Positions 3,193 through 60,465 of a stretch of 64,000 nucleotides of DNA are shown one piece after another. The notes under the pieces are model-generated. The model searched no databases, was not told where the DNA came from, and worked only from the letters and a program-made list of their open reading frames with translations. How positions within the stretch are numbered: position 1 is the stretch's first letter; each line of letters opens with the position of its first letter. The translations under genes and the position numbers were made by a program. Source of the stretch: Octopus sinensis (lineage: Eukaryota); assembly GCF_006345805.1 (NCBI RefSeq), contig NC_043000.1, positions 131,130,001-131,194,000 of the forward strand, in the 5' to 3' direction.

Positions 3193-3588
3193 GTATGGTA
3201 AGTACCTTGCTTACGAACTACATGGTTGTGGGTTCAGTCCCACTGCGTGGCACTTTGGGCAAGTGTCTTCTACTATGGCCTCAGCCGACCAAAGCTTTGT
3301 GAGTGGATTTGGTAGACGGAAACTGAAAGAAGCCCGTCTTATATATGTATGTATATATATATGTGTGTGTGTGTGTGTATATGTTTGTGTGTCTGTGTTT
3401 GTCCCCCCAACATCACTTGACAAATGATGCTGGTGTGCTTACGTCCCTGTAACTTAGCGGTTCAGCAAAAGAAACCGATAGAATAAGTACTAGGCTTACA
3501 AAGAACAAATCCTGGGGTCGATTTTCTCAACTAAAAGGCGGTGCTCCAGCATGGCCACAGTCAAATGACTGAAACAAGTAAAAGAGTA
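3193..3588 (+). mobile_element. SINE family A
   Basis: Family consensus, ending in an (AAAGAGT) tail. Confidence 0.85.
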
Positions 3589-3624
3589 ATATCTGAACTG
3601 GTATTAATATATTGATGTGAATAT

Positions 3625-4031
3625 TACTCTTTTACTCTTTTACTCGTTTCAGTCATTTGACTGCGGCCATGCTGGAGCACCGCCTTTAATCGAACAAATC
3701 GACCCCGGGACTTATTCTTTTGTAAGCCCTGTACTTATTCTATCGGTCTCTTTTGCCGAACCGCTAAGTAACGGGGACATAAACACACCAGCATCGGTTG
3801 TCAAGCAATGCTTGTGGGACAAACACAGACACACAAACACACATACGCATATATATATATATACATATATACGACGGGCTTCTTTCAGTTTCCGTCTACC
3901 AAATCCACTCACAAGGCTTTGGTCGGCCCGAGGCTATAGTAGAAGACACTTGCCCAAGGTGCCACGCAGTGGGACTGAAGCTGGAACCATGTGGTTGGTA
4001 AACAAGCTACTTACCACACAGCCACTCCTGT
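3625..4031 (-). mobile_element. SINE family A
   Basis: Reverse-complement full copy, tail-to-tail with 3193-3588. Confidence 0.85.
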
Positions 4032-15250: not shown

Positions 15251-15282
<32 letters not shown>

Positions 15283-16736
15283 TACAACAGGCTTCTTTCA
15301 GTTTCCATTTCCCAAATCCACTCACAAGGCTTTGGCCAGCTCAACACTAAAGTAATGCAAGTTTGCCCATGGTACCATGCAGTGGGACTGAACCTGGAAC
15401 CATGTGGTTGGGAAGCAAGCTTCTTACTACACAGCCACACTATTTTTGATAGTATCTCTGACACGATAGTGTTAAAGCAGTTAATGATTGTTTTATGACA
15501 TCCCTATATGTACAACACCATATCCAAATCTGCAGTATAAAAATCGAATTCCTTTTAAAATCAGAATAGCTTGACTTCCTCTTTGGGATCAGATATGGTT
15601 TAAAAAAAATTCAATCTGAAAGAGAATCAATAAAATATATATCTATTGCCAGGAATGTAACAGAAATAACTTCAATAACCCATTTGAGTTTTGTGACAGT
15701 GTATTTAGTATTTCACATATTATGCATAAAATATCATATAGTACATATCCTACTACGGAAGTTATGTAATTCACCTCATTTCATGAAGGTCACACTTCAT
15801 GTCATAAATAGTATCTGCTATATATCACATGCTTTAAAGTACATTCTATACAGTATTTGCCATGCAGTACATGTATGTATAAAGCATGTTATCAGATAAG
15901 TTGACTGCTTAATGTTTGGTTAGTAAACAACCAACCAAGAAATTTGTTTTGCAGTCTTTTGTTAGTATTATGTTATGTCTGACTAATAAATATTCTTAAT
16001 TCTCAAATGGCACTGTTCACCTTGCTAAAAATAGGTAATACCGGATAGGGTTGAGTCATTGATTTTGGCAAAAACTGGTAATGATATTCATATTTTTGTC
16101 ATTATCAAGCTGGTTATTTGGAGCATAAGTTAACATAATATATTAAAGTAAGGCCTTGATTTATATCATTTAATACTTTTGCATTTGTTTCTATTCGTTT
16201 TAAGAATCGTCTTTTTTATTTTGTAATTTTTTTAGTTGTTTTAATCATTTGACTGTAGCCTTCAAGAATTTTTAGCCAAATGAATCAACCCAAGTATTTA
16301 TTTTTCTTTTAAAACTTGGTACTTTTTCTATTGGTTTCCTTTGCTGAACTACTAAGTTACTGGGATGTAAACACACCAAGACTGGTTGTCAAGCAGTGGT
16401 GTGGGGGCAAACACAGATACAAACACATACACACACATACATACATACATGTGTGTGTGTGTGTGCAAGCACATGGTCTTGTGGTTAGGCTGTTGCACTC
16501 ATGATTGCTAGATCGTGGATTCAATTCCTTGATGGGGCAGTACATTTTGTCCTTGAGCAAAACACATCATTTCACATTGCTCCAGTCTCCCTTCTATCAG
16601 TGGGGACTGTTGGCTTCTCACCGAACCAGCGGGGTGGCATCATTTGGAGGTTAAAACAATGCAAAAGCACTTTGTGACCAGCAATGTGTAACAACATTTG
16701 ATAGCCTGGTCAGTCACATGATATATATTTATATAT

Positions 16737-31391: not shown

Positions 31392-31956
31392 TTAGGCTGG
31401 TGCATAATTATTGCAGCTTTTTTTCAACAAATTTTATTCCACAAAAATAATAACAATATTTAACAGAAACATCTTTAAATGACGGTCTGACCGTCTACCA
31501 AGCAAATAGGAAGCAGTAATTGAAGTAGATGGTGAATATACTCCGGAATAATCATTTAAAGATGTTTTTGTTACGTGCTGTTATTGTTTTTGTTGAATAA
31601 AATTTGTTGAATAAAGGCCACAATAATTATTTGTTTTTCCTTCTCGAGCCATGCCTGGCTCATAAGGGCTGGTTTCCTGGTTTCCTTGGTGTATAGGTTC
31701 CCCACCTGGATGGGATGCCGGTCTATCGCAGGTGAGCTGCATGATGCAGGAGGAAACAGTGAGAGAAAGTTGTGGCAAAAGAGTCAGCAGAAGTTTGCCA
31801 TCACCTTCTGCCGGATCCATGTGACGCTTAAGTGTTTCGCTCATAAACACACACAGCGCCCAGTCTGAGATTCGAACCTGCAATCCTTTGACCGTGAGTC
31901 CACTGCTCTAACCACGAGGCCATGTGCCTCCACACAATAATTATGCACCAACCCAA
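31392..31956. mobile_element. Mariner-derived MITE carrying a SINE insertion
   Basis: TIRs TTAGGCTGGTGCATAATTATTG / reverse complement TTGGGTTGGTGCATAATTATTG, with TA flanks at 31390-91 and 31957-58. Confidence 0.8.
31631..31932 (-). mobile_element. SINE family D with a 12-bp TSD
   Basis: tRNA-like head GGAGGCACATGGCCT(A/C)GTGGTTAGAGCAG; TSD CACAATAATTAT at 31619-31630 and 31933-31944. Confidence 0.85.
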
Positions 31957-36090: not shown

Positions 36091-37094
36091 TTCAAAATTT
36101 CCTGATGAAGGCTGGAAGGTACATCAGCCGAAACGTTGTGTTAACAACAAATAAAATGAGGACAAATATCTGTTGAATGTAAATAATGTAAATAATGTAG
36201 ACAATGAGCAATATTCTTGTTCAAGAATAATAAATTTGTACTCTACTAAAGTATAGAATGACCCCCTCAGATTACTGTCAAATTGTTTTTATTATAACTA
36301 TGCATATGGCAACAAGCTGTCAGAATCGTGCATATGCTGGTCAAAAAGCTTAGCAGCATTTCATCCATCTTTACATTCTGAGTTCAAATTCCACCAAGGT
36401 CAACTTTGTATTTCATTTTTTCAGGGTCAATAAAATAAGGACCAGCTGAGGTCTGAGGTTGATGTAAATCAACTTACCCAAGCCCTTTGAAATTGCTGGC
36501 CTTGTGCCAAAAAAATTTGAAATCATTATAACTAAACATAAAAACAAACATTGATATATAGATATATATTTATTTTATTCCTTTTGTCTTTTAAGTTCCA
36601 GCCATGTGGTCGTGACCATGCTGGAGTACCACCATTACTTTCTACCTTTTCCACAGGCCTCTTAAGTAGATGATTTCTTGTGCATGGTGGGATTTCATAT
36701 CACTGCTCTCGCATGTGCCTTTTACACAATTATTAGTTCATTTGGTGTGTGACAGAGTTGACAATGCTGCCTTCATTTTGTACTTCATGCCAACACATTG
36801 GTTCATCTAATATCATGGATAGGAGAATGTCTGGTTCCATTTTAAGACATCTACATCTACATTACATAGATTCTTTAATTCTTTTGGCAAATCATTGAAG
36901 AGTTGTGGGCCTTTGAATGCCAAGCTATTGCAGTACCTAGACTTCATTTAGATGATTGGACGGTACTTTTGATACTTCACAATGGCATTTGTATAGTTTT
37001 CGATGCCAAAGTTAGTTGCTAGGCTTTCCAGAATTTTCCACTTAAAAGAAAGAAAAATAATAATAATAATAATAATAATAATGATAATAATAAA

Positions 37095-42739: not shown

Positions 42740-43071
42740 CTAGCAGTATCGCCCGGCGTTGCTCGGGTTTGTAAGGGAAATAACTATATAAGCATTTTTA
42801 GAGAGTTATAGCAAAAAAATAGCAAAAAAATGCATTAAAAATGGAAAAAAAATTATGGTAAATTTTTTTTTAAATCGTTGACTCATCGTAGACATTTTTA
42901 GAGAGTTACTTCCCTTATATAATAGCGAAAAATGCAATACCCAGAAGGGCTCGATATGAATCACGACTATAAGATACCCGGTTTTGGTTAAACTGCACCG
43001 CAAAATGTGGGAGTAGTTAGGAATCTAAATCGTAGGAGACAGACATACAACTTGACTTTTATATATAAAGA
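42740..43071 (-). mobile_element. Non-autonomous Helitron (left member of the head-to-head pair)
   Basis: On the minus strand it starts TCTTTATATATAAAA and ends with the hairpin CCCGAGCAACGCCGGG plus CTAG, between A and T. Confidence 0.8.
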
Positions 43072-43077
43072 TATATA

Positions 43078-43583
43078 TCTATATATATAAAACTCTAGTT
43101 GTGTGAGTGTCTGTCCCCTTCGATTTAGATTCCTAACTCCTCCCACATTTTGCGGTGCAGTTTAACCAAATTCGGGTATCTTATAGTCGTGATTCATATC
43201 GAGCCTGTCTGACTATTAGCGCGCGTCAATGATGAGTCTACGATTTTAAAAATAATTTAACATCATTTTTTATTCCATTTTAATGCATAAAATGCATTGT
43301 ATGTCGATGGCGGCAGAGTTGGCGTCCACGCTCACAGCTGCACCTGTTTGCTTCTCCCCCTTCCCTCCCTCGTGAAGCTGTGGGGAAGGGAGTGTAAAGA
43401 AATCAACGTCGTAATGCGTTGTGAAGGAAACCAGCGTTCTTTTAGAACAACGACTTCATGGCTTGAAGACACCAAAACAAAAATGGCTAAGAAAGCCCGA
43501 ATTTATAAGGGAAGTAACTCTCTAAAAATGCTTATATAGTTATTTCCCTTACAAACCCGAGCAACGCCGGGCGATACTGCTAG
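43078..43583 (+). mobile_element. Non-autonomous Helitron (right member of the head-to-head pair)
   Basis: Starts A|TCTATATATATAAAA and ends with the hairpin CCCGAGCAACGCCGGG...CTAG|T. Confidence 0.85.
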
Positions 43584-43594
43584 TATATATATAA

Positions 43595-43800
43595 AACAAT
43601 AATTATGGGTTTAGCAACAAGTTGCTTCACCACATACCGAAAATTTAGAAATAGCAGCCAAAACATCGTTATTTTCTTTTCACTACAAAATATGACTATG
43701 TGAGTTACAGATATTGTTATCTGTGGAGTCATATTTTGGTTGCTATTTCGAAATTTTCGGTATGTGATGAAGCAACTTGTTGCTAAACCCTCAATTATTG

Positions 43801-43802
<2 letters not shown>
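43595..43802. mobile_element. Foldback/MITE-like hairpin element in (TA)n
   Basis: 69-bp arms (43595-43663 vs 43734-43802) with 5 mismatches, plus an inner CAAAATATGACT...AGTCATATTTTG hairpin. Confidence 0.75.
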
Positions 43803-43866
<64 letters not shown>

Positions 43867-46967: not shown

Positions 46968-47870
46968 CATGGTCTGATCAATAAGTATCCGGACTGTTGC
47001 CATAGTAATGAAGCTAAAGCACACAGAGTGAATCCACTTAACACATTGACCTTGAACTCCGTTGTGAATGCATACTAAGTTTTAACGTTCTAGCTCATTT
47101 CCACTGCTTACAGCAGTGCTTGGAAGGAAGGTGTGTAGCATGTGATTGCCGCATTGACCATGACAGAGAAAACTGAGCAGAGAATCTGCATCAAATATTG
47201 CCAAAAGCTTGGCAATACCTGCTCAGTGGCCTATGCAAAGTTTTCAAAAAGTTTCCATCATTCTCAACACAATCAAGATCTTGTGCAACTGAAATCTGAG
47301 TGCTGAAGCCTGAGTGTCTTTTTGGTCAGTTGAAAGCAGTTTTGGCACAAACTTGGCAGACACACATCTCATACCCAAATCTTCAATGATAATGGACTGA
47401 ACTGAACCATAACTAATCTGCACATCCTCTGATAACTCATAGATGATGATTCAAGGATTTCCCCTCACAGCTACATGCACATCTGTGATGTTTATCTCAG
47501 TTCTGCTGGTTGCAGGTCTCCCAGAACGTTCATCACTATCGACATTTTTTGGCCATCTTGGAAACGTCTGAAACACTCGTGCACTTGTGTACAGCTCATA
47601 AACTCCTCTCCATACACTTTCTGCAACTTAGTGTAGGCTTCTGAGCAGGTATCGCCATGACAACTTTCACTATCGTGATCAATACAATGATCACACGCTA
47701 CACACCTTCCTACCAAGCACTGCTGTAAACAGTGGAAGTGAACTAGAACATTAAAACTTAGTGCACATGCACAGTAGAATTCAAGGTCAATCTTAGCCAG
47801 GCAGCTTCATTTTGTGTGCTTTAGCCTTGTTACTATGGCAACAGTCCAGATACTTATTGATCAGACCTTG
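46968..47870 (-). mobile_element. Non-autonomous mariner (irritans/Hsmar2-like) with about 270-bp inverted 5' ends
   Basis: 41-bp TIRs with 2 mismatches (CATGGTCTGATCAATAAGTATCCGGACTGTTGCCATAGTAA) and TA on both sides. The minus strand gives GDTCSEAYTKLQKVYGEE...LGMRCVSAKFVPKLL...NFLK; the plus strand gives MTEKTEQRICIKYCQKLG. Confidence 0.85.
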
Positions 47871-51800: not shown

Positions 51801-54250
51801 TTAAAAAGTAAAAAAATAAACATCAGATTATATTTGTAATATTAAATCAGATGAGCATGACTGGAATATCTTTGATTATAGCTTTGTTTAATCAGGCCTA
51901 TTTTCAATATGTGCTGGAACTTTGGGGTTTATTGACTGGCCCCAGGTAACCATCTTTTGCTTACTGAGGACCTCTTCCCATTGTTGCTGTTTTTGTAATT
52001 GTTATTTGTTGGTACTGTTGTTAATTTTGTTTTATACGGTCTGATGTACCACTCTAGCTGTGTTGTATCCTATCTTTCGGACATTCCTCTTTGTTGTTAA
52101 GCCCTAGTGACACATAAAGGAATTATCATCATCATTATTATTGAGGTGGCAAGCTGGCAGAATCGTTAGCATGCCAGGCAAAATGCTTAGCAGTATTTTG
52201 TCTGCTGCTACATTCTGAGTTCAAACTTTGCCTTTCATCCCATCATCATCATCATCATCATCATCATCATTTCCATTTCACTTCTCAGAGCTCTCAATTT
52301 TACTTGCTCCAATTAATTAAGAGCAGACAGCAACCTGTTGTCTCACAGTGTCACCCTCCACAATACCTAACACCCATCTCAAAATTCTCCTTGTTCCCAA
52401 GGAGCAGTTTTCCAAGTATGTTCTGTCCTCATGTCAATTCCACTTTCTCCGACATACTTCTCAAACCTGGTGGTTAGTACTCCCAGAGCCCCTACAACTA
52501 CTGGAATGACTGTTACTCTCTTCATTGCCTACATTCATAGTTTTTTTGTTTTTTAGTAGCTTGTATTTTACTATCTTTTCCCGCTCTTTGTCACATACAT
52601 GTATGCCCCCAGGTATGGCATATCCACAATAACAATGTCTGGTCTCTAAGCATCAACCACTGAGTCACACTGGATTGCTTGTGTTGTGTCTTCTCAAGGC
52701 CACAATGGAAATAACTACATTTTTCCCATGTAAACCAAAATAATTTCTTTGTTTTCTGTCTTCTCAAATACAGCAACAAAATCTTCCCCCACTACTACTT
52801 TTGAATTTCCTTGCTGATTCAAATCAGCTAACTCAAGACTGCAATGGAAATAGCTACATCTTCTTCATGTAAATCGAAATAATTTTTTAAAATTTCTTTT
52901 CTTATTTACTCTGTAAGAACAGCCATGTTCTATGAAATATTTAAACTAATAAATTCTGTTGTGTTCCCTTTCCCCGAGCCCCTCTCTCTCCCTGTCAGGC
53001 ATGTCTTTCTTGTTTGTTTTGTGTTTTCTCACACATAACAGCATCTTCCTTCACTGGTGATGTGTTCACCCACCCCACCCCTACCAGCTCACTTTCTTGT
53101 ATACAGCTGCACAGTTAGACACACCCTCCTCTGCCCCATCTTTCTTAATCTCTTTCCTCACGTCTTCTTCCTCGTCCTGTTACATTCGCCACCATATTCT
53201 GCTCAATACTACAGATTTGCTTGTCAATTGTTTGACCTTCGGGCATGTCCCTTCGCGGCTGATAATATATGCATCTCTGGTCACGAGCAGTAGTGGAGGA
53301 GCATCATAGCCAAGTGTTGAGAGGAATTCTTTGGAGTTTAAATAATTCATCACTGGAAATATGGATGTTTCGTTCAACAGCCTTAAACAAACCTTATTCA
53401 GGGACCTTTTGAGCAGGATGGGTTACTCAACCTGAAGAAAATTCTGACTGGGCCCCACCTGCAAGGTCATGCACTGTTTCTCTTGATATGAGATCATCTT
53501 GTCGCACACATATGGTTGTAATGCATGTGCCTGGTGTACCCTTATCAGATGGGTAATCATGATGGGTATATTAGGCTCCATATATTTGTACCCCAGTGTC
53601 ACTTTGAGGGCATGTACTGCTCTCTCACTCAATAATAATAATGATGATTATTATAGTAATATGCAACACCAGGCAGTGGCTCTCATGGCTTCGGATCTTA
53701 ACTGACTGGAGGTGTTATCATGTACATGTTTTTTTGTCTTGGTATAAAAAGATGGGCTACAGCAAATATTTTACTCAATACCACAGATTTGCTTTCCAGT
53801 TGCTTACCTTAACCAGTTGAGTATGTTCCTTAGTGGCTGACAATATGTGCATCTCTTAACATGAGCAGGAGTAGTGGGAAAGCATCATAGCCATGTATTG
53901 AGAGGAATTCTTTGGGGTTTGAAGAATTTAGCTCTGGGAACATAGGTGTTTTGTTCATCAATCTTGAACTTATTGCAGCAGTCCTTTAGTTTTTCTAAGC
54001 CCTTTAAAAAAACTTGGAAAGTTGGGTCTCCAACCCGGCCTTTTGAAATATCCTTACAGCCAGGAATTTTTCAGCACCCCCTCATACCCTTCAAAGCTAC
54101 TAAAGTGTACATCATTGATACACTAGTATCGATTCAATCAATTACACCCCTTTCACAAATTATATGACTGTGTATTTGTGTCACTAAATCCTTGTCGTTG
54201 TTTTACATTGTTATTACTTACCAAATTTTTTATTTTCCTTCTTTCCTCAG

Positions 54251-54442
54251 GTACAAATGTGCAGTAGTTACCAGCATGTTGCACCTTGGTTTAAACTGCT
54301 TATCTACCCACAACGCTCTTTAATGGACTGGTGCCGAATAAGCATTCGCAGGAACTTACGTAATTGTGTAGATGACAGCATTGAAGAGTTGGAAATTCCT
54401 TTGGAACTTAAACATTTCCTATCATTAAAAGAATTCACATGA
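54251..54442 (+). CDS. ASB-type protein, terminal coding exon (SOCS box, 63 aa plus stop)
   Basis: Polypyrimidine tract and TTTCCTCAG| acceptor (AG 54249-54250). Phase-0 frame VQMCSSYQHVAPWFKLLIYPQRSLMDWCRISIRRNLRNCVDDSIEELEIPLELKHFLSLKEFT* contains a BC-box (PQRSLMDWCRISIR) and a Cullin-box-like LEIPLELKHFL. The phase matches the 28186 donor. Confidence 0.85.
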   Translation, partial: VQMCSSYQHVAPWFKLLIYPQRSLMDWCRISIRRNLRNCVDDSIEELEIPLELKHFLSLKEFT

Positions 54443-54674
54443 TGCTAAACCCAGACCTCTTTTAATATTTCATTTTATATTCTACCTTTTGCAGTTGGTA
54501 CCATCAATGCGAAGGACTATCATTGCATTTGTCAATTCAATTTCTCTGAAGAACTGGATGCCTAAATACAACAGCCATCCTTGCTGCTACCCCAAATTCT
54601 TTCTTAATAATACCCGAAAAGCAAATTATAGTGCAAAACTGTAAAACTCACAGTATGTGTTTGTTTGTGTGTGA

Positions 54675-54717
<43 letters not shown>

Positions 54718-54951
54718 TATATATATACAGTAGCTGTTTATTTATTTTGTGATACTGAACCAAAAAGAGCTCATGATAATCTTTTGTTAGAAGTGTGTGT
54801 GTGTGTTGAGTCTGATACTCATTGATATAACAGGATTACATATACACCCTATGCCCAAACGTAAAGATTTCATGCAATCAACCAATCAACTATATTGCAT
54901 GCTTGACTGTATTCATCAATGCACTGTGAAATAAGTACATATATATGTATA

Positions 54952-55057
54952 TATCTGTAAAATAATATGTGACAATTATTCGGACAATTATTCGGCATCC
55001 GAAACTCAGAGTTTTATCTTGGCTACTGAATAATTGTCACATATTATTTTACAGATA
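54952..55057. repeat. Hairpin with 30-bp perfect arms (probable inverted Penelope-like terminus)
   Basis: 54952-54981 TATCTGTAAAATAATATGTGACAATTATTC is the reverse complement of 55028-55057. The loop carries GAAACTCAGAGTT, resembling the 3' half of a hammerhead core. Confidence 0.85.
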
Positions 55058-55143
55058 AATTTCCTCTATTTACATAATATTGAGGTCTCTTTCTTTTGTT
55101 ATCTTACCGTTTTTACCAATATATATATATATATATATATATA

Positions 55144-55347
55144 TTTATTATATAGAAGGAGCTTCTACAGGACTAGAACTGTTTCATTCAAGAGAAATCT
55201 CAGGAAGCTCCTGAAGCTTCCTGAAGATTTCTCTTGTATGAAACAGTTCTAGTCCTGTAGAAGCTCCTTCTATATATAAATTAATTTTACTCTACTATGT
55301 ATTGAGTACCTTATTTACTGTGGTTAACCCCGAATCAACCCGGGACC

Positions 55348-55350
<3 letters not shown>
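55144..55350. repeat. First copy of a tandem palindromic unit (imperfect hairpin 55144-55280 plus tail); second copy 55401-55598
   Basis: Same sequence as 55401-55598, with a small duplicated centre (GGAAGC-TCCTGAA-GCTTCC) and a few substitutions. The copies are separated by (AT)n. Confidence 0.9.
55215..55265 (+). ncRNA. Type I hammerhead-like motif in palindrome copy 1 (weaker stem II)
   Basis: Same layout as 55464-55514: AGCTTC, CTGAAGA (55221-27), TTTCTCTTGTAT, GAAACAG-TTCTAGTC-CTGTA, GAAGCT. Confidence 0.4.
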
Positions 55351-55400
<50 letters not shown>

Positions 55401-55401
<1 letters not shown>

Positions 55402-55530
55402 TTATTATATAGAAGGAGCTTCTACAGGACTAGTACTGTTTCATTCAAGAGAAATCTTCAGGAAGCTTCCTGAAGATTTCTCTTGAATGAAACAGTACTA
55501 GTCCTGTAGAAGCTCCTTCTATATAATAAA
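55401..55530. repeat. 130-bp perfect spacer-less palindrome (centre 55465/55466)
   Basis: The left arm TTTATTATATAGAAGG...CTTCAGGAAG is the exact reverse complement of the right arm CTTCCTGAAG...CTATATAATAAA, checked base by base. Confidence 0.95.
55464..55514 (+). ncRNA. Type I hammerhead-like motif in the right arm of palindrome copy 2
   Basis: Stem I AGCTTC(55464-69)/GAAGCT(55509-14), core CTGAAGA (55470-76), short stem II TTTC-TCTT-GAAT (non-canonical U-U first pair), GAA, stem III ACAG/CTGT with loop TACTAGTC, and a GUA triplet ending at 55508. Confidence 0.5.
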
Positions 55531-55595
55531 TTAATTTTACTCTGCTATGTATGAGTACCTTACTACTGTGGTTAACCCCGGATCAACCCGGGACC

Positions 55596-55630
<35 letters not shown>

Positions 55631-56309
55631 TGTACATTTAAACACATAAGAGGCATCCATCATAGGATTCCTTGCATGCTAGAGAGAACAGTTAAATACC
55701 AAACCACTATTAGGGATAAAATTTTGAAGGAATGAAAAATAAAAACATCTGATTACCCTTTGATTTTATTAATTATATATATATGTATATATATATATAT
55801 ATTTAATTATATACATATAAAATTTTATTTACCATATTGAGTACTCTCTCACTCACTTTTGTCCTTTTACACACAAAAATGTTGGTGTAAAAACACACAC
55901 ACACACACACAGACATATGTTGCTACTTTCGAAACAGTTACAAATAAAGAAATTAAGAAAAAAAAAAGTGAAAAGTCTTTCAAAATTCATATTTTTTAAG
56001 ATGGATATTTTTTTTTTATAAGATTTTAATCATTCAGAGAAGCTCTTGTTTTAAATTAAAACATAAGGTTTCATCTATTGTGATTGATTGATTAATTGAT
56101 TTGATAATTGGATTAATATTGATGACAGTCTGGAATGTTATGATGGAGATAATAAAATTTACAATAAATATATAAATAAAAACAAAAAGCAAATAAATCT
56201 TGTATAGTTGTTGTTCATTCTTTGATTTTTTTCTTTAATACGCCTTACTTCCCTAGGCATGGATGCATTGAAACTCCAACATCTGGCAGCTGACTTGGCA
56301 AACACCCAT

Positions 56310-56349
<40 letters not shown>

Positions 56350-56844
56350 CTTTACTACCCACAAGGGGCTAAACATAGAGGGGACAAACAAGGACAGACA
56401 AAGGGATTAAGTCGATTACATCGACCCCAGTGCGAAACTGGTACTTTATTTATCGACCCCGAAAGGATGAAAGGCAAAGTCAACCTCGGCGGAATTCGAA
56501 CTTGTATGTGTGTGTGTGTGTGTGTGTGTGCACGTGCTAGAAATAGCAGCTAAATATCAACCTCAAAAACAAGAAGGCATTTGAGATTACACAGGACAAT
56601 CAGCTGACAAGCTGGTAATTCAAGTCCACTGCAAGCATTCCCTTGTCTTTTACCTTTTATCTTTTTCTTTATCTCGGTCATCTGACTGCAGCCATGCTGG
56701 AGCACACCTTGAAGAATATTTAGCCAAATGAATTGAACCCAGCACTTAATGTCTTTTTTAAACCTGGTTCTTATTCTATCGGTCTCTTTTGCCAAATTAC
56801 ACACACACACACACACATACATATATATATGTGAGTGTGTGTGT

Positions 56845-60233: not shown

Positions 60234-60465
60234 GGCGGCGAGCTGGCAGAAACTTTAGCACACCGGGCGAAATGCTTAGCTGTATTTCATCTGCCACTAC
60301 ATTCTGAGTTCAAATTCCATCGAGGTCAATTTTGCCTTTCATCATTTCAGGGTTGATTAAATAAGTACCAGTTACACACTGGGATCAATATAATCGACTT
60401 AATCCATTTGTCTGTCCTTGTTTGTCCCCTCTGTGTGGAGCCCCTTGTGGACAGTAAAGAAATAA
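60234..60465 (+). mobile_element. SINE family B
   Basis: Full copy. Confidence 0.85.

What the first reader, a model, noticed from the sequence alone, without database searches (positions are those of the whole stretch)
55401..55530. Self-masked hammerhead: 130-bp perfect palindrome ending in the first canonical poly(A) signal after the ASB stop
Seen: a spacer-less 130-bp perfect palindrome whose right arm lays out a type I hammerhead (stem I AGCTTC/GAAGCT, CTGAAGA, GAA, stem III ACAG/CTGT, GUA at 55506-55508). Scanning by eye from the stop (54442), the first AATAAA is at 55525-55530, 16 nt after the predicted cut. Because it is a palindrome, the same motif is encoded on both strands. Known: Penelope-like elements carry minimal type I hammerheads in their termini and often leave inverted terminal copies, and coleoids A-to-I edit dsRNA extensively. 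Inference: if the ASB 3' UTR runs through here, the antisense arm locks the ribozyme in a ~63-bp helix that is an ideal ADAR/Dicer substrate. Editing or co-transcriptional folding could gate cleavage just upstream of the poly(A) signal, acting as an editing-controlled mRNA switch. Caveats: stem II is short with a U-U first pair, and variant hexamers (AATACA, GATAAA, TATAAA) upstream could end the UTR earlier.
Basis: partly seen in the sequence, partly recalled or inferred. Interest (0 to 1): 0.7.

Follow-up and report, generated by a model that had tools for sequence, protein, structure and literature searches.

The report
Young palindromic repeat insertion, not ribozyme switch
The perfect 130-bp palindrome is real, but it belongs to a roughly 460-bp repeat lying in an (AT)n microsatellite downstream of an Octopus sinensis ankyrin/SOCS-box gene and missing from that site in two other Octopus species, so it is best read as an ordinary mobile-element remnant whose hammerhead resemblance is partial.

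Summary
Window 55401-55530 is a perfect, spacer-less 130-bp palindrome. Its right arm carries the hammerhead core boxes with three helices. AATAAA at 55525-55530 is the first on the + strand after the stop at 54440-54442.

The interpretation mostly fails.
- **Repeat context:** the palindrome is unit 2 of two ~250-bp units, each (AT)n + palindrome + ~70-nt tail. Unit 1 is imperfect and lacks an intact motif on either strand.
- **Not conserved:** the window is Octopus sinensis. In O. vulgaris (flanks ~99% identical) the orthologous site is a plain (AT)12 with both units absent. O. bimaculoides lacks them too, so this cannot be a conserved 3'-UTR switch.
- **Weak hammerhead:** it has U·U instead of G10.1-C11.1 and a 3-bp helix II. 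It has no Rfam hammerhead match. The catalytic fold is -8 kcal/mol against -108 for the hairpin, whose masking arm is transcribed first.
- **Likely origin:** the layout matches Penelope-like element remnants: (TA)n target, head-to-head truncated 3' ends, and an extra tail on one side. A genuine PLE minimal hammerhead at 36102-36140, and its inverted pair in O. bimaculoides, show the same layout but a canonical core.

Best reading: a lineage-specific retroelement-type foldback insertion that incidentally adds a hairpin and a poly(A) hexamer. Interest is low.

The parts
54251..54442 (+). Last coding exon (SOCS box) of the ankyrin-repeat/SOCS-box gene; stop codon TGA at 54440-54442
   Evidence: Translation. 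Pfam SOCS_box E=4.5e-9, 36.8 bits against a cut-off of 23.5. Identical to the C-terminus of O. vulgaris CAI9720846.1 / P0001.
55119..55141 (.). Left (AT)n tract, part of the pre-existing microsatellite that holds the insertion
   Evidence: TRF. O. vulgaris has only (AT)12 between the same flanks.
55142..55604 (.). Whole block absent from the orthologous O. vulgaris site; its boundaries are ambiguous within the AT tracts
   Evidence: blastn: window 54200-55141 and 55605-56326 align to L001 31352-32295 and 32273-32987, overlapping only in (AT)n. Empty site read directly.
55142..55283 (.). Unit 1 palindrome, imperfect: 59-nt arms, 93% complementary, ~24-nt partly self-complementary centre that is 8-9 nt longer than in unit 2
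   Evidence: (I4), alignment.
55284..55350 (+). Unit 1 tail (non-palindromic, present on one side only), ending in hairpin CCCCG-AATCAA-CCCGGG + ACCTAC
   Evidence: Homologous to 55531-55598.
55351..55398 (.). (AT)24 tract between the two units
   Evidence: TRF, 100% matches.
55401..55530 (.). Unit 2 palindrome: perfect, spacer-less, 2 x 65 nt (the finding)
   Evidence: I2. Reverse-complement identity and predicted RNA hairpin of -108.4 kcal/mol.
55464..55514 (+). Hammerhead-like motif: core CUGAAGA / GAA / A15.1-U16.1 / A17 present; helix I 6 bp; helix II U.U + 3 bp; helix III 4 bp with an 8-nt loop holding the palindrome ACUAGU
   Evidence: Sequence, descriptor, shuffles, energies. No Rfam hammerhead match.
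55417..55467 (-). Mirror copy of the same motif on the - strand (predicted cut after 55423)
   Evidence: follows from the perfect palindrome.
55525..55530 (+). AATAAA hexamer at the outer end of the right arm; first on the + strand after the stop; brought in by the insertion
   Evidence: Absent from O. vulgaris, whose first AATAAA lies 813 nt after the stop and corresponds to window 55738.
55531..55598 (+). Unit 2 tail
55599..55627 (.). Right (AT)n tract
   Evidence: TRF.

Best explanation
The palindrome is the younger or homogenised of two ~200-bp foldback units lying in a pre-existing (AT)n microsatellite about 680 nt downstream of the stop codon of an Octopus sinensis ankyrin/SOCS-box gene. 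Each unit is a head-to-head pair of short copies of one ~65-70-nt sequence. The A/T-rich ends, which carry AATAAA, point outward and the truncated ends meet in the middle. An extra ~70-nt tail sits on one side only.

This is the insertion footprint described for Penelope-like retroelements, which target (TA)n, form inverted and tandem 5'-truncated copies, and leave a one-sided tail. I therefore take the arms to be severely 5'-truncated 3' ends of such an element (inference). The hammerhead-like motif is then a degenerate or variant relic of that element's terminal hammerhead, or a chance look-alike.

The perfect arm identity of unit 2 comes either from snap-back synthesis at insertion or from arm-to-arm conversion (inference).

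For the host gene the element has no conserved role. If the 3' UTR reads through it, the RNA folds at once into a ~63-bp perfect hairpin. The element also supplies a new AATAAA. Self-cleavage is not expected.

Shown: the anatomy, the absence in two other species, the missing hammerhead features and the energetics. Inferred: the retroelement family, the way the palindrome formed, and any effect on the transcript.
For: Structure and tandem units.

Species and absence at the orthologous site:
- The window is O. sinensis GCA_006345805.1 (100% over 4.2 kb).
- The O. vulgaris empty site is ccaat(at)12acagtg.
- O. bimaculoides has only 65 nt of microsatellite in place of window 54955-55774.
- The flanks differ by 13 substitutions in 1359 nt between O. 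sinensis and O. vulgaris. The two units differ by 8 mismatches plus 5 gaps in ~200 nt. The units were therefore already diverged, either as two insertions or one dimeric one, or as an older array lost in O. vulgaris.

PLE-like layout:
- Literature description in PMC8557442 and PMC4209133.
- In-session control: a genuine PLE min-HHR at window 36102-36140, followed 13 nt later by AATAAA.
- In O. bimaculoides L002 (15268-15355 on the - strand, 15556-15651 on the + strand) the same ~96-nt PLE end forms a head-to-head pair. Its 3' ends point outward, with a 13-bp target duplication ACAACATAGGTCC and a 31-nt tail on one side.

Against ribozyme function:
- No Rfam hammerhead hit.
- U.U at 10.1/11.1.
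- Unit 1 motifs are broken.
- -8.0 against -108.4 kcal/mol, and P(hammerhead fold)=0.024 even in the isolated 51-mer.

Arm-to-arm concerted change: both arms of unit 1 carry GAACTG/CAGTTC and both arms of unit 2 carry GTACTG/CAGTAC.
Against: No sequence homology to any PLE was shown, and no RT/GIY-YIG coding remnant was found beside the element. Only a few neighbouring ORFs were scanned.

No second copy of the arm or tail was found anywhere searched:
- the rest of the window, or ~100 kb of O. vulgaris, O. bimaculoides and O. sinensis loci
- JGI metagenomes and IMG/VR
- 1.84 billion representative proteins

That it is a mobile family is therefore inferred from the presence/absence pattern and the layout, not shown.

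The motif does not have the PLE min-HHR signature: a bulged nucleotide after A9, G10.1-C11.1 and a 6-8-bp helix II. The tail is 68-70 nt, against the 30-40 nt described for PLEs.

A precise deletion in O. vulgaris, or an assembly- or haplotype-specific feature of the O. sinensis assembly, is not excluded.

The motif is rare in shuffled sequence (1 in 400), so it is not trivially dismissed as chance.
Confidence: 0.62

Rival explanations
1. Foldback or MITE-like DNA element, or a purely local rearrangement. On the local-rearrangement reading, a break in the fragile (AT)n tract was repaired by fold-back (hairpin-primed) synthesis, giving an inverted duplication. Unequal exchange between AT tracts then duplicated the unit. 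The hammerhead resemblance is chance.
For: The arms make up the whole palindrome with no spacer. (AT)n tracts flank every unit. The window holds other MITE-like inverted repeats, including one with a TA target duplication just upstream at 54946-55063 and a mariner transposase remnant. No other copy of the unit was found. The core boxes alone occur by chance.
Against: Neither the 65-nt arm nor the 70-nt tail has a source sequence nearby, or in O. vulgaris at this site, from which a local duplication could have been copied. The unit as a whole has no terminal inverted repeats. The units are about 4 times more diverged than the species' flanks, which does not fit a recent in-place duplication. 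The one-sided tail and the outward AATAAA ends fit the PLE footprint better.
Confidence: 0.22
2. A degenerate dimer of a non-LTR retrozyme: tandem ~250-nt units, each with a type I hammerhead, that is or was expressed as self-cleaving circular RNA. In such RNAs the ribozyme is normally masked in a rod-like fold.
For: Unit period ~250 nt with predicted cut sites 249 nt apart. GC is low: 0.30 for the array and 0.37 without the AT tracts. The type I layout has a 6-bp helix I, a 4-position helix II and a palindromic ACUAGU in loop 3, as described for metazoan type I hammerheads (PMC4209133; PMC7229834 and the 2026 preprint). The motif is rare in shuffles.
Against: Published criteria require complete hammerheads in at least two consecutive units. 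Unit 1 fails on both strands. There is no G10.1-C11.1 and no Rfam Hammerhead_1 match. Each unit contains a long (AT)n tract. No further copies were found.
Confidence: 0.06
3. One reading: a functional hammerhead in the ASB 3' UTR that is locked by the antisense arm and released by A-to-I editing or co-transcriptional folding, to control 3'-end formation.
For: The core boxes and three helices are present. AATAAA lies 16 nt after the predicted cut. The hairpin would be a good ADAR substrate (established knowledge of coleoid editing, not tested here).
Against: Absent from the orthologous site in O. vulgaris and O. bimaculoides. Missing G10.1-C11.1, 3-bp helix II, no Rfam hit. A 100 kcal/mol energy gap. 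The masking arm is made first. Editing would also change the essential core adenosines. The sister unit has lost the motif. There is no evidence that the UTR extends this far.
Confidence: 0.03
4. A young hairpin-RNA or microRNA-like locus: the transcript's perfect hairpin is diced into small RNAs.
For: A 63-bp perfect hairpin of -108 kcal/mol. Sub-threshold hits to many miRNA-precursor models. Both arms changed together between units.
Against: All miRNA hits are far below gathering scores (e.g. 64.6 against 100) and are generic long-hairpin matches. Nothing reaches threshold in the window. The element is not conserved between sister species. A single concerted change is equally explained by DNA-level arm conversion.
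Confidence: 0.07

Closest known systems
Penelope-like element (PLE) insertion remnants: inverted/tandem 5'-truncated 3' ends carrying terminal hammerheads (Cervera & de la Pena 2014, PMC4209133; Craig et al. 2021, PMC8557442)
   Same: Sits in a (TA)n microsatellite. Head-to-head copies with the 3' ends outward, tandem repetition, and an extra tail on one side only. A CUGANGA...GAAA motif a few dozen nt from the outer end, followed by AATAAA. Same layout as the genuine PLE remnant pair in O. bimaculoides L002 15268-15651, and the same hammerhead-then-AATAAA order as window 36102-36155.
   Different: No sequence similarity to that PLE family and no RT/GIY-YIG body nearby. The hammerhead lacks the bulged nucleotide, G10.1-C11.1 and the long helix II of PLE min-HHRs, and has a 4-bp helix III instead of none. 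No spacer between the arms. The tail is about twice the described length.
Metazoan non-LTR retrozymes / satellite hammerheads (newt satellite 2, Schistosoma Sm-alpha, mussel and coral retrozymes; PMC7229834)
   Same: Tandem units of 170-400 nt with low GC. Type I topology with a 6-bp helix I and a palindromic loop 3. The ribozyme is normally hidden in a stable alternative fold.
   Different: Only two units, and only one has an intact core. No G10.1-C11.1 and no loop-loop contacts. An (AT)n tract lies inside each unit. No evidence of a genomic family or of circular RNA.
Inverted-repeat (foldback/MITE, inverted SINE pair) elements in 3' UTRs that form dsRNA edited by ADAR
   Same: A long perfect intramolecular duplex downstream of a coding region. 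Lineage-specific presence. Expected to be an editing and Dicer substrate if transcribed.
   Different: Arms are only 65 nt and abut without a loop. Transcription across the site was not shown.
Viroid and viroid-like RNAs in which hammerheads of both polarities are masked in a rod-like fold and act only during transcription
   Same: The idea of a self-masked hammerhead, with the motif present on both strands.
   Different: In viroids the masking strand is made after the ribozyme. Here it is made before it, on either strand. Here the two-strand symmetry is a trivial result of the DNA palindrome.

Membership tests
Hammerhead ribozyme (type I) | Core boxes C3-U4-G5-A6-N7-G8-A9, G12-A13-A14, A15.1-U16.1 and H17 | tested here: met
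   CTGAAGA 55470-76, GAA 55489-91, A55492-T55507, A55508.
Hammerhead ribozyme (type I) | Three helices around the core, with helix II closed by G10.1-C11.1 | tested here: not met
   Helix I is 6 bp and helix III is 4 bp. Positions 10.1/11.1 are U55477 and U55488 (no pair), and only 3 bp follow. G10.1-C11.1 is called highly conserved even in minimal PLE hammerheads (PMC4209133).
Hammerhead ribozyme (type I) | Match to a curated covariance model (Rfam hammerhead families) | tested here: not met
   No hammerhead family at E<=10 in 5 kb or in 71 nt, and none at gathering score in the window. Caveat: the same models also miss the genuine PLE min-HHR at 36102, so this test speaks only to canonical three-helix types.
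Hammerhead ribozyme (type I) | Motif kept (with covariation) in related copies | tested here: not met
   Unit 1 + strand: A->T breaks a helix II pair (GTAT). Unit 1 - strand: the core reads CUGAGAU. The only inter-unit change inside the motif that is neutral lies in loop 3.
Hammerhead ribozyme (type I) | Catalytic fold reachable by the RNA | tested here: not met
   Hammerhead fold -8.0 against hairpin -108.4 kcal/mol. In the isolated 51-mer the MFE pairs core AAGA with UCUU and P(hammerhead)=0.024.
Hammerhead ribozyme (type I) | Site-specific self-cleavage | not testable with these tools
   Needs in vitro transcription of 55460-55530 and of the two-unit array.
Penelope-like element remnant | Sequence homology to a PLE pseudo-LTR, or an adjacent RT/GIY-YIG ORF | tested here: inconclusive
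   No similarity to the one PLE end available here, 36101-36196. The few neighbouring ORFs scanned show only a weak zf-RVT hit and a mariner HTH. No PLE consensus library was at hand.
Penelope-like element remnant | Insertion footprint: (TA)n target, inverted and tandem 5'-truncated copies, one-sided tail | tested here: met
   Description in PMC8557442. Same footprint in a genuine PLE remnant.
Penelope-like element remnant | min-HHR signature: nucleotide between 9 and 10.1, G10.1-C11.1, helix II of 6-8 bp, palindromic 15.2-16.2 / loop 3 | tested here: not met
   Only the palindromic loop 3 (ACUAGU) is present. The control at 36102-36140 shows all the features.
Non-LTR retrozyme | At least two consecutive tandem units, each with a complete type I hammerhead | tested here: not met
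   There are two units of ~250 nt, but unit 1 has no intact motif. Criterion from the 2026 preprint.
MITE / foldback DNA transposon | Terminal inverted repeats plus a target-site duplication, in a multi-copy family | tested here: inconclusive
   The palindrome supplies inverted repeats, but the unit including its tail has none at its ends. Any duplication is hidden in (AT)n. No other copy in ~165 kb of Octopus DNA.
microRNA / hairpin-RNA precursor | Match to a curated precursor family, or conservation of the hairpin | tested here: not met
   Best hit mir-3199 at 64.6 bits against a gathering score of 100; all others lower. Absent in the sister species.

The most novel reading that the evidence does not exclude
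The unit is a live or recently live non-autonomous retroelement of octopuses, a PLE-derived or retrozyme-like family. It would carry a divergent type I hammerhead that tolerates U.U at 10.1/11.1 and works in trans or as a dimer through its palindromic loop 3. Its recent arrival in this 3' flank would have given O. sinensis, but not O. vulgaris, a new poly(A) signal and an editable hairpin. That would be a natural experiment in how a 3' end changes between sister species.
Probability: 0.05. Interest if true: 0.6.

Novelty: new member of a known kind. Interest (0 to 1): 0.2.

Why it matters
The evidence points the other way.

What remains is modest but usable. It is a clean presence/absence difference between O. 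sinensis and O. vulgaris of a foldback repeat that adds a perfect 63-bp hairpin and a canonical poly(A) hexamer downstream of a SOCS-box gene. That makes it a handy species marker. It is also a small test case for how retroelement debris in microsatellites reshapes 3' flanks in a lineage known for heavy RNA editing.

It also shows that core-box hammerhead look-alikes need the G10.1-C11.1 pair, conservation across copies and orthology checks before being believed.

Tried and rejected
- **SOCS-exon protein search:** found nothing even though the exact sequence is in the database. This was a word-index miss. The 327-aa ankyrin exon worked.
- **Exact look-up of the last-exon ORF:** nothing.
- **Exact-pattern scans:** arm and tail in JGI metagenomes and the arm in IMG/VR gave nothing, as expected for collections with little animal DNA.
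- **HMMER search of a 45-aa ORF spanning tail and arm:** 0 hits against 1.84 billion representative proteins. There is no ORF-level trace of a family, which is weak evidence.
- **Logan contigs of the gene, L004-L008:** these turned out to be unspliced exon-1 sequence from another octopus, with no 3'-UTR information.
- **tRNA/SINE idea for the tail:** the - strand has a B-box-like GGTTGATCC, but ARAGORN finds nothing, Rfam finds no small-RNA match and there is no A box. Dropped.
- **Helitron idea:** there is a 3' hairpin and an AT target, but the termini are not TC...CTRR. Dropped.
- **LINE 3' ends:** those of the window's RTE-like LINE fragments are unrelated to the tail.
- **Supplementary PLE consensus files of PMC8557442:** not held.
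- **Assembly artefact:** considered but thought unlikely, because unit 1 is an independent, imperfect copy of the same palindrome. It cannot be excluded without reads.

Full report
**1. What is there**

Window 55401-55530 is a perfect palindrome: two 65-nt arms, 100% complementary, with no spacer (I2). It is not isolated. A self-comparison shows two tandem units, 55119-55379 and 55375-55627, 92% identical. Each unit is built as (AT)n, then a palindrome, then a ~70-nt non-palindromic tail ending in a small GC hairpin and ACCTAC, then (AT)n.

Unit 1's palindrome (55142-55283) is imperfect. It is 93% complementary, and its centre is 8-9 nt longer than unit 2's. No other copy of arm or tail exists in the 64-kb window.

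The right arm lays out CUGAAGA, GAA, A15.1-U16.1 and A17, with a 6-bp helix I, a helix II of U.U plus 3 bp, and a 4-bp helix III. The mirror motif is on the - strand. AATAAA at 55525-55530 is the first on the + strand after the stop at 54440-54442.

The gene is an ankyrin-repeat + SOCS-box protein with two coding exons. The ankyrin exon lies near 27.2-28.2 kb and the SOCS exon at 54251-54442.

**2. Is the hammerhead look more than chance?**

A descriptor set at the candidate's own stringency finds only this site, on both strands, in the window. It found a hit in 1 of 400 dinucleotide shuffles. Because the descriptor was fitted afterwards, the fair figure lies between that and the 0.02-0.15 per window of the looser versions.

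The core boxes alone are common. CTGANGA-N7-17-GAAA occurs six times in the window, three of them in this element, against 1.67 expected. So the resemblance is real enough to need an explanation, but weak as evidence of a ribozyme.

**3. Tests of the ribozyme reading**

- **Curated models:** no Rfam hammerhead family matches at E<=10 in a 5-kb search or in a 71-nt search, and none at gathering score. As a calibration, the same models also miss a genuine PLE minimal hammerhead in this window.
- **Helix II:** positions 10.1/11.1 are U.U. The G10.1-C11.1 pair is reported as highly conserved even in the most reduced PLE hammerheads (PMC4209133).
- **Sister unit:** it does not keep the motif. On the + strand an A->T change breaks helix II. 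On the - strand the core reads CUGAGAU.
- **Energetics:** the hammerhead fold is worth -8.0 kcal/mol against -108.4 for the hairpin. Even the isolated 51-mer prefers to pair core AAGA with UCUU, and the hammerhead fold has an ensemble probability of 0.024.
- **Order of synthesis (inference):** on either strand the masking arm is transcribed before the ribozyme arm, and helix I's 5' strand lies at the hairpin's nucleation point. Co-transcriptional folding therefore favours the hairpin, the opposite of the viroid case.
- **Editing (inference):** A-to-I editing of the duplex would also hit A6, A9, A13, A14 and A15.1.

**4. Comparative evidence, the decisive part**

The ankyrin exon identified the gene in Octopus. 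Cluster members gave the orthologous loci of O. vulgaris (L001), O. bimaculoides (L002) and O. sinensis (L003). The window is O. sinensis GCA_006345805.1, 100% identical over 4.2 kb.

In O. vulgaris the flanks align at 99.2% and 97%, and they meet in a plain (AT)12...ttaccgtttttaccaat(at)12acagtgtacattt.... Both units (window ~55142-55604) are absent.

O. bimaculoides has only 65 nt of microsatellite where O. sinensis has 54955-55774. It lacks the element, and also the small MITE upstream of it.

In O. vulgaris the first AATAAA after the stop is at +813, the orthologue of window 55738. In O. sinensis the insertion adds one at +1083, ahead of the hexamer at 55738, which now lies at +1296.

A structure missing from a sister species whose flanks differ by about 1% cannot be a conserved regulatory device of this gene.

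The two units differ by 8 mismatches and 5 gaps in ~200 nt, about four times the species divergence of the flanks (13 in 1359). The units were therefore already different when they arrived, as two insertions into the same microsatellite or as one dimeric insertion. Alternatively the array is older and O. vulgaris lost it by exchange between AT tracts.

Unit 2's arms are identical while unit 1's differ at four sites. One site differs between units but is the same in both arms of each unit (GAACTG/CAGTTC against GTACTG/CAGTAC). This points to snap-back formation or to arm-to-arm conversion.

**5. What it most likely is**

The layout matches the insertion footprint described for Penelope-like elements. 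They prefer (TA)n microsatellites, show strong 5' truncation, form partial tandems, carry an adjacent inverted truncated copy, and leave an extra tail at one end only (PMC8557442). Their hammerheads sit near the 3' end and often occur as close pairs on opposite strands (PMC4209133).

I found a direct control in the data.
- Window 36102-36140 carries a textbook PLE minimal hammerhead: CTGATGA, bulged A, helix II GGCTGG/CAGCC starting with G10.1-C11.1, GAAAC-GT. AATAAA follows 13 nt later.
- In O. bimaculoides the same ~96-nt end forms a head-to-head pair (L002 15268-15355 on the - strand and 15556-15651 on the + strand). Its 3' ends point outward, with a 13-bp target duplication ACAACATAGGTCC and a 31-nt tail on one side.

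The finding has the same plan: (AT)n, inverted arm, direct arm, tail, (AT)n, with a hammerhead-like box followed 16 nt later by AATAAA at each outer end.

The family assignment remains an inference. There is no sequence similarity to that PLE and no RT/GIY-YIG remnant beside the element. The motif lacks the PLE signature. No second copy was found in any collection I could reach.

**6. Rivals**

- **Local fold-back repair in a fragile AT tract, or a MITE-like DNA element:** this stays possible (about 0.2). It explains neither the tail nor the lack of any nearby source sequence.
- **Degenerate non-LTR retrozyme dimer:** it fits the unit size and GC content, but fails the criterion of intact hammerheads in consecutive units.
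- **Hairpin-RNA/miRNA reading:** it rests only on generic sub-threshold hairpin hits.
about 0.03.

**7. Verdict**

The Penelope pointer is supported by architecture. The ribozyme-switch mechanism is not supported. The feature is a lineage-specific repeat insertion of a known kind, and interest is low.

Whether the 3' UTR reaches the site, whether the hairpin is edited or diced, and whether any cleavage occurs could not be tested here.

Noticed in passing
window 36102-36140 (+), with AATAAA at 36150-36155; orthologous copies in L001 ~13566 and L002 ~11521: A genuine PLE-type minimal hammerhead: CTGATGA, bulged A, 6-bp helix II opening with G10.1-C11.1, GAAAC-GT with palindromic ACGT. It lies in the gene's 26-kb intron, directly after a long (TGTA)n tract. 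No Rfam hammerhead model detects it, even at E<=10.
   Followed up: partly
L002 (O. bimaculoides) 15255-15695: Head-to-head inverted pair of the same ~96-nt PLE 3' end (arms extend to ~140 nt). It has a 13-bp target duplication ACAACATAGGTCC, a 31-nt extra tail on one side, and a tRNA/SINE-like fragment plus (AAT)n in the spacer. It is a clean example of the PLE insertion footprint.
   Followed up: partly
window 54946-55063: A ~118-bp MITE with ~30-nt terminal inverted repeats (TCTGTAAAATAATATGTGACAATTATTC...) and a TA target duplication. It gives sub-threshold hits to the MITE-derived MIR1120 family. It is present in O. vulgaris but lies in the stretch missing from O. bimaculoides.
   Followed up: partly
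window 54955-55774 vs L002 25547-25612: The whole 820-nt stretch downstream of the gene is represented in O. bimaculoides by 65 nt of (CATA)n/(AT)n microsatellite. This 3' flank is an indel-prone, microsatellite-seeded region.
   Followed up: no
window 3352-3869, 3534-3687, 31404-31630, 42936-43217, 43584-43813: Several other long inverted repeats with short spacers (arms 56-151 nt, 83-96% complementary). Hairpin-forming repeat pairs are common in this window.
   Followed up: no
window 47492-47716 (-): ORF with the HTH domain of Mos1/mariner transposase (Pfam HTH_48, E=2.6e-7), a mariner remnant in the intron.
   Followed up: no
window 56350-56460 and similar sequence near 60400 and elsewhere: A dispersed SINE-like repeat (ttcctttactacccacaaggggctaaacatagaggggacaaac...) lies directly next to an (AT)n tract. 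A LINE 3' fragment (RLTSLGMDALKLQHLAADL...) ends at the other side of the same tract. (AT)n tracts in this genome often mark transposable-element junctions.
   Followed up: no
tool behaviour, vs 39-40: The word-indexed protein search returned 'no candidate' for a 63-aa query that is an exact substring of a database representative (P0001). Short queries can be missed, so a null result from that tool is weak evidence.
   Followed up: yes
window ~27.7 kb (ankyrin exon) vs P0001: The window's protein differs from O. vulgaris CAI9720846.1 by a single residue (R in the window, K in O. vulgaris, in LLLRAGAQ[R/K]DD). This is consistent with the window being O. sinensis.
   Followed up: yes
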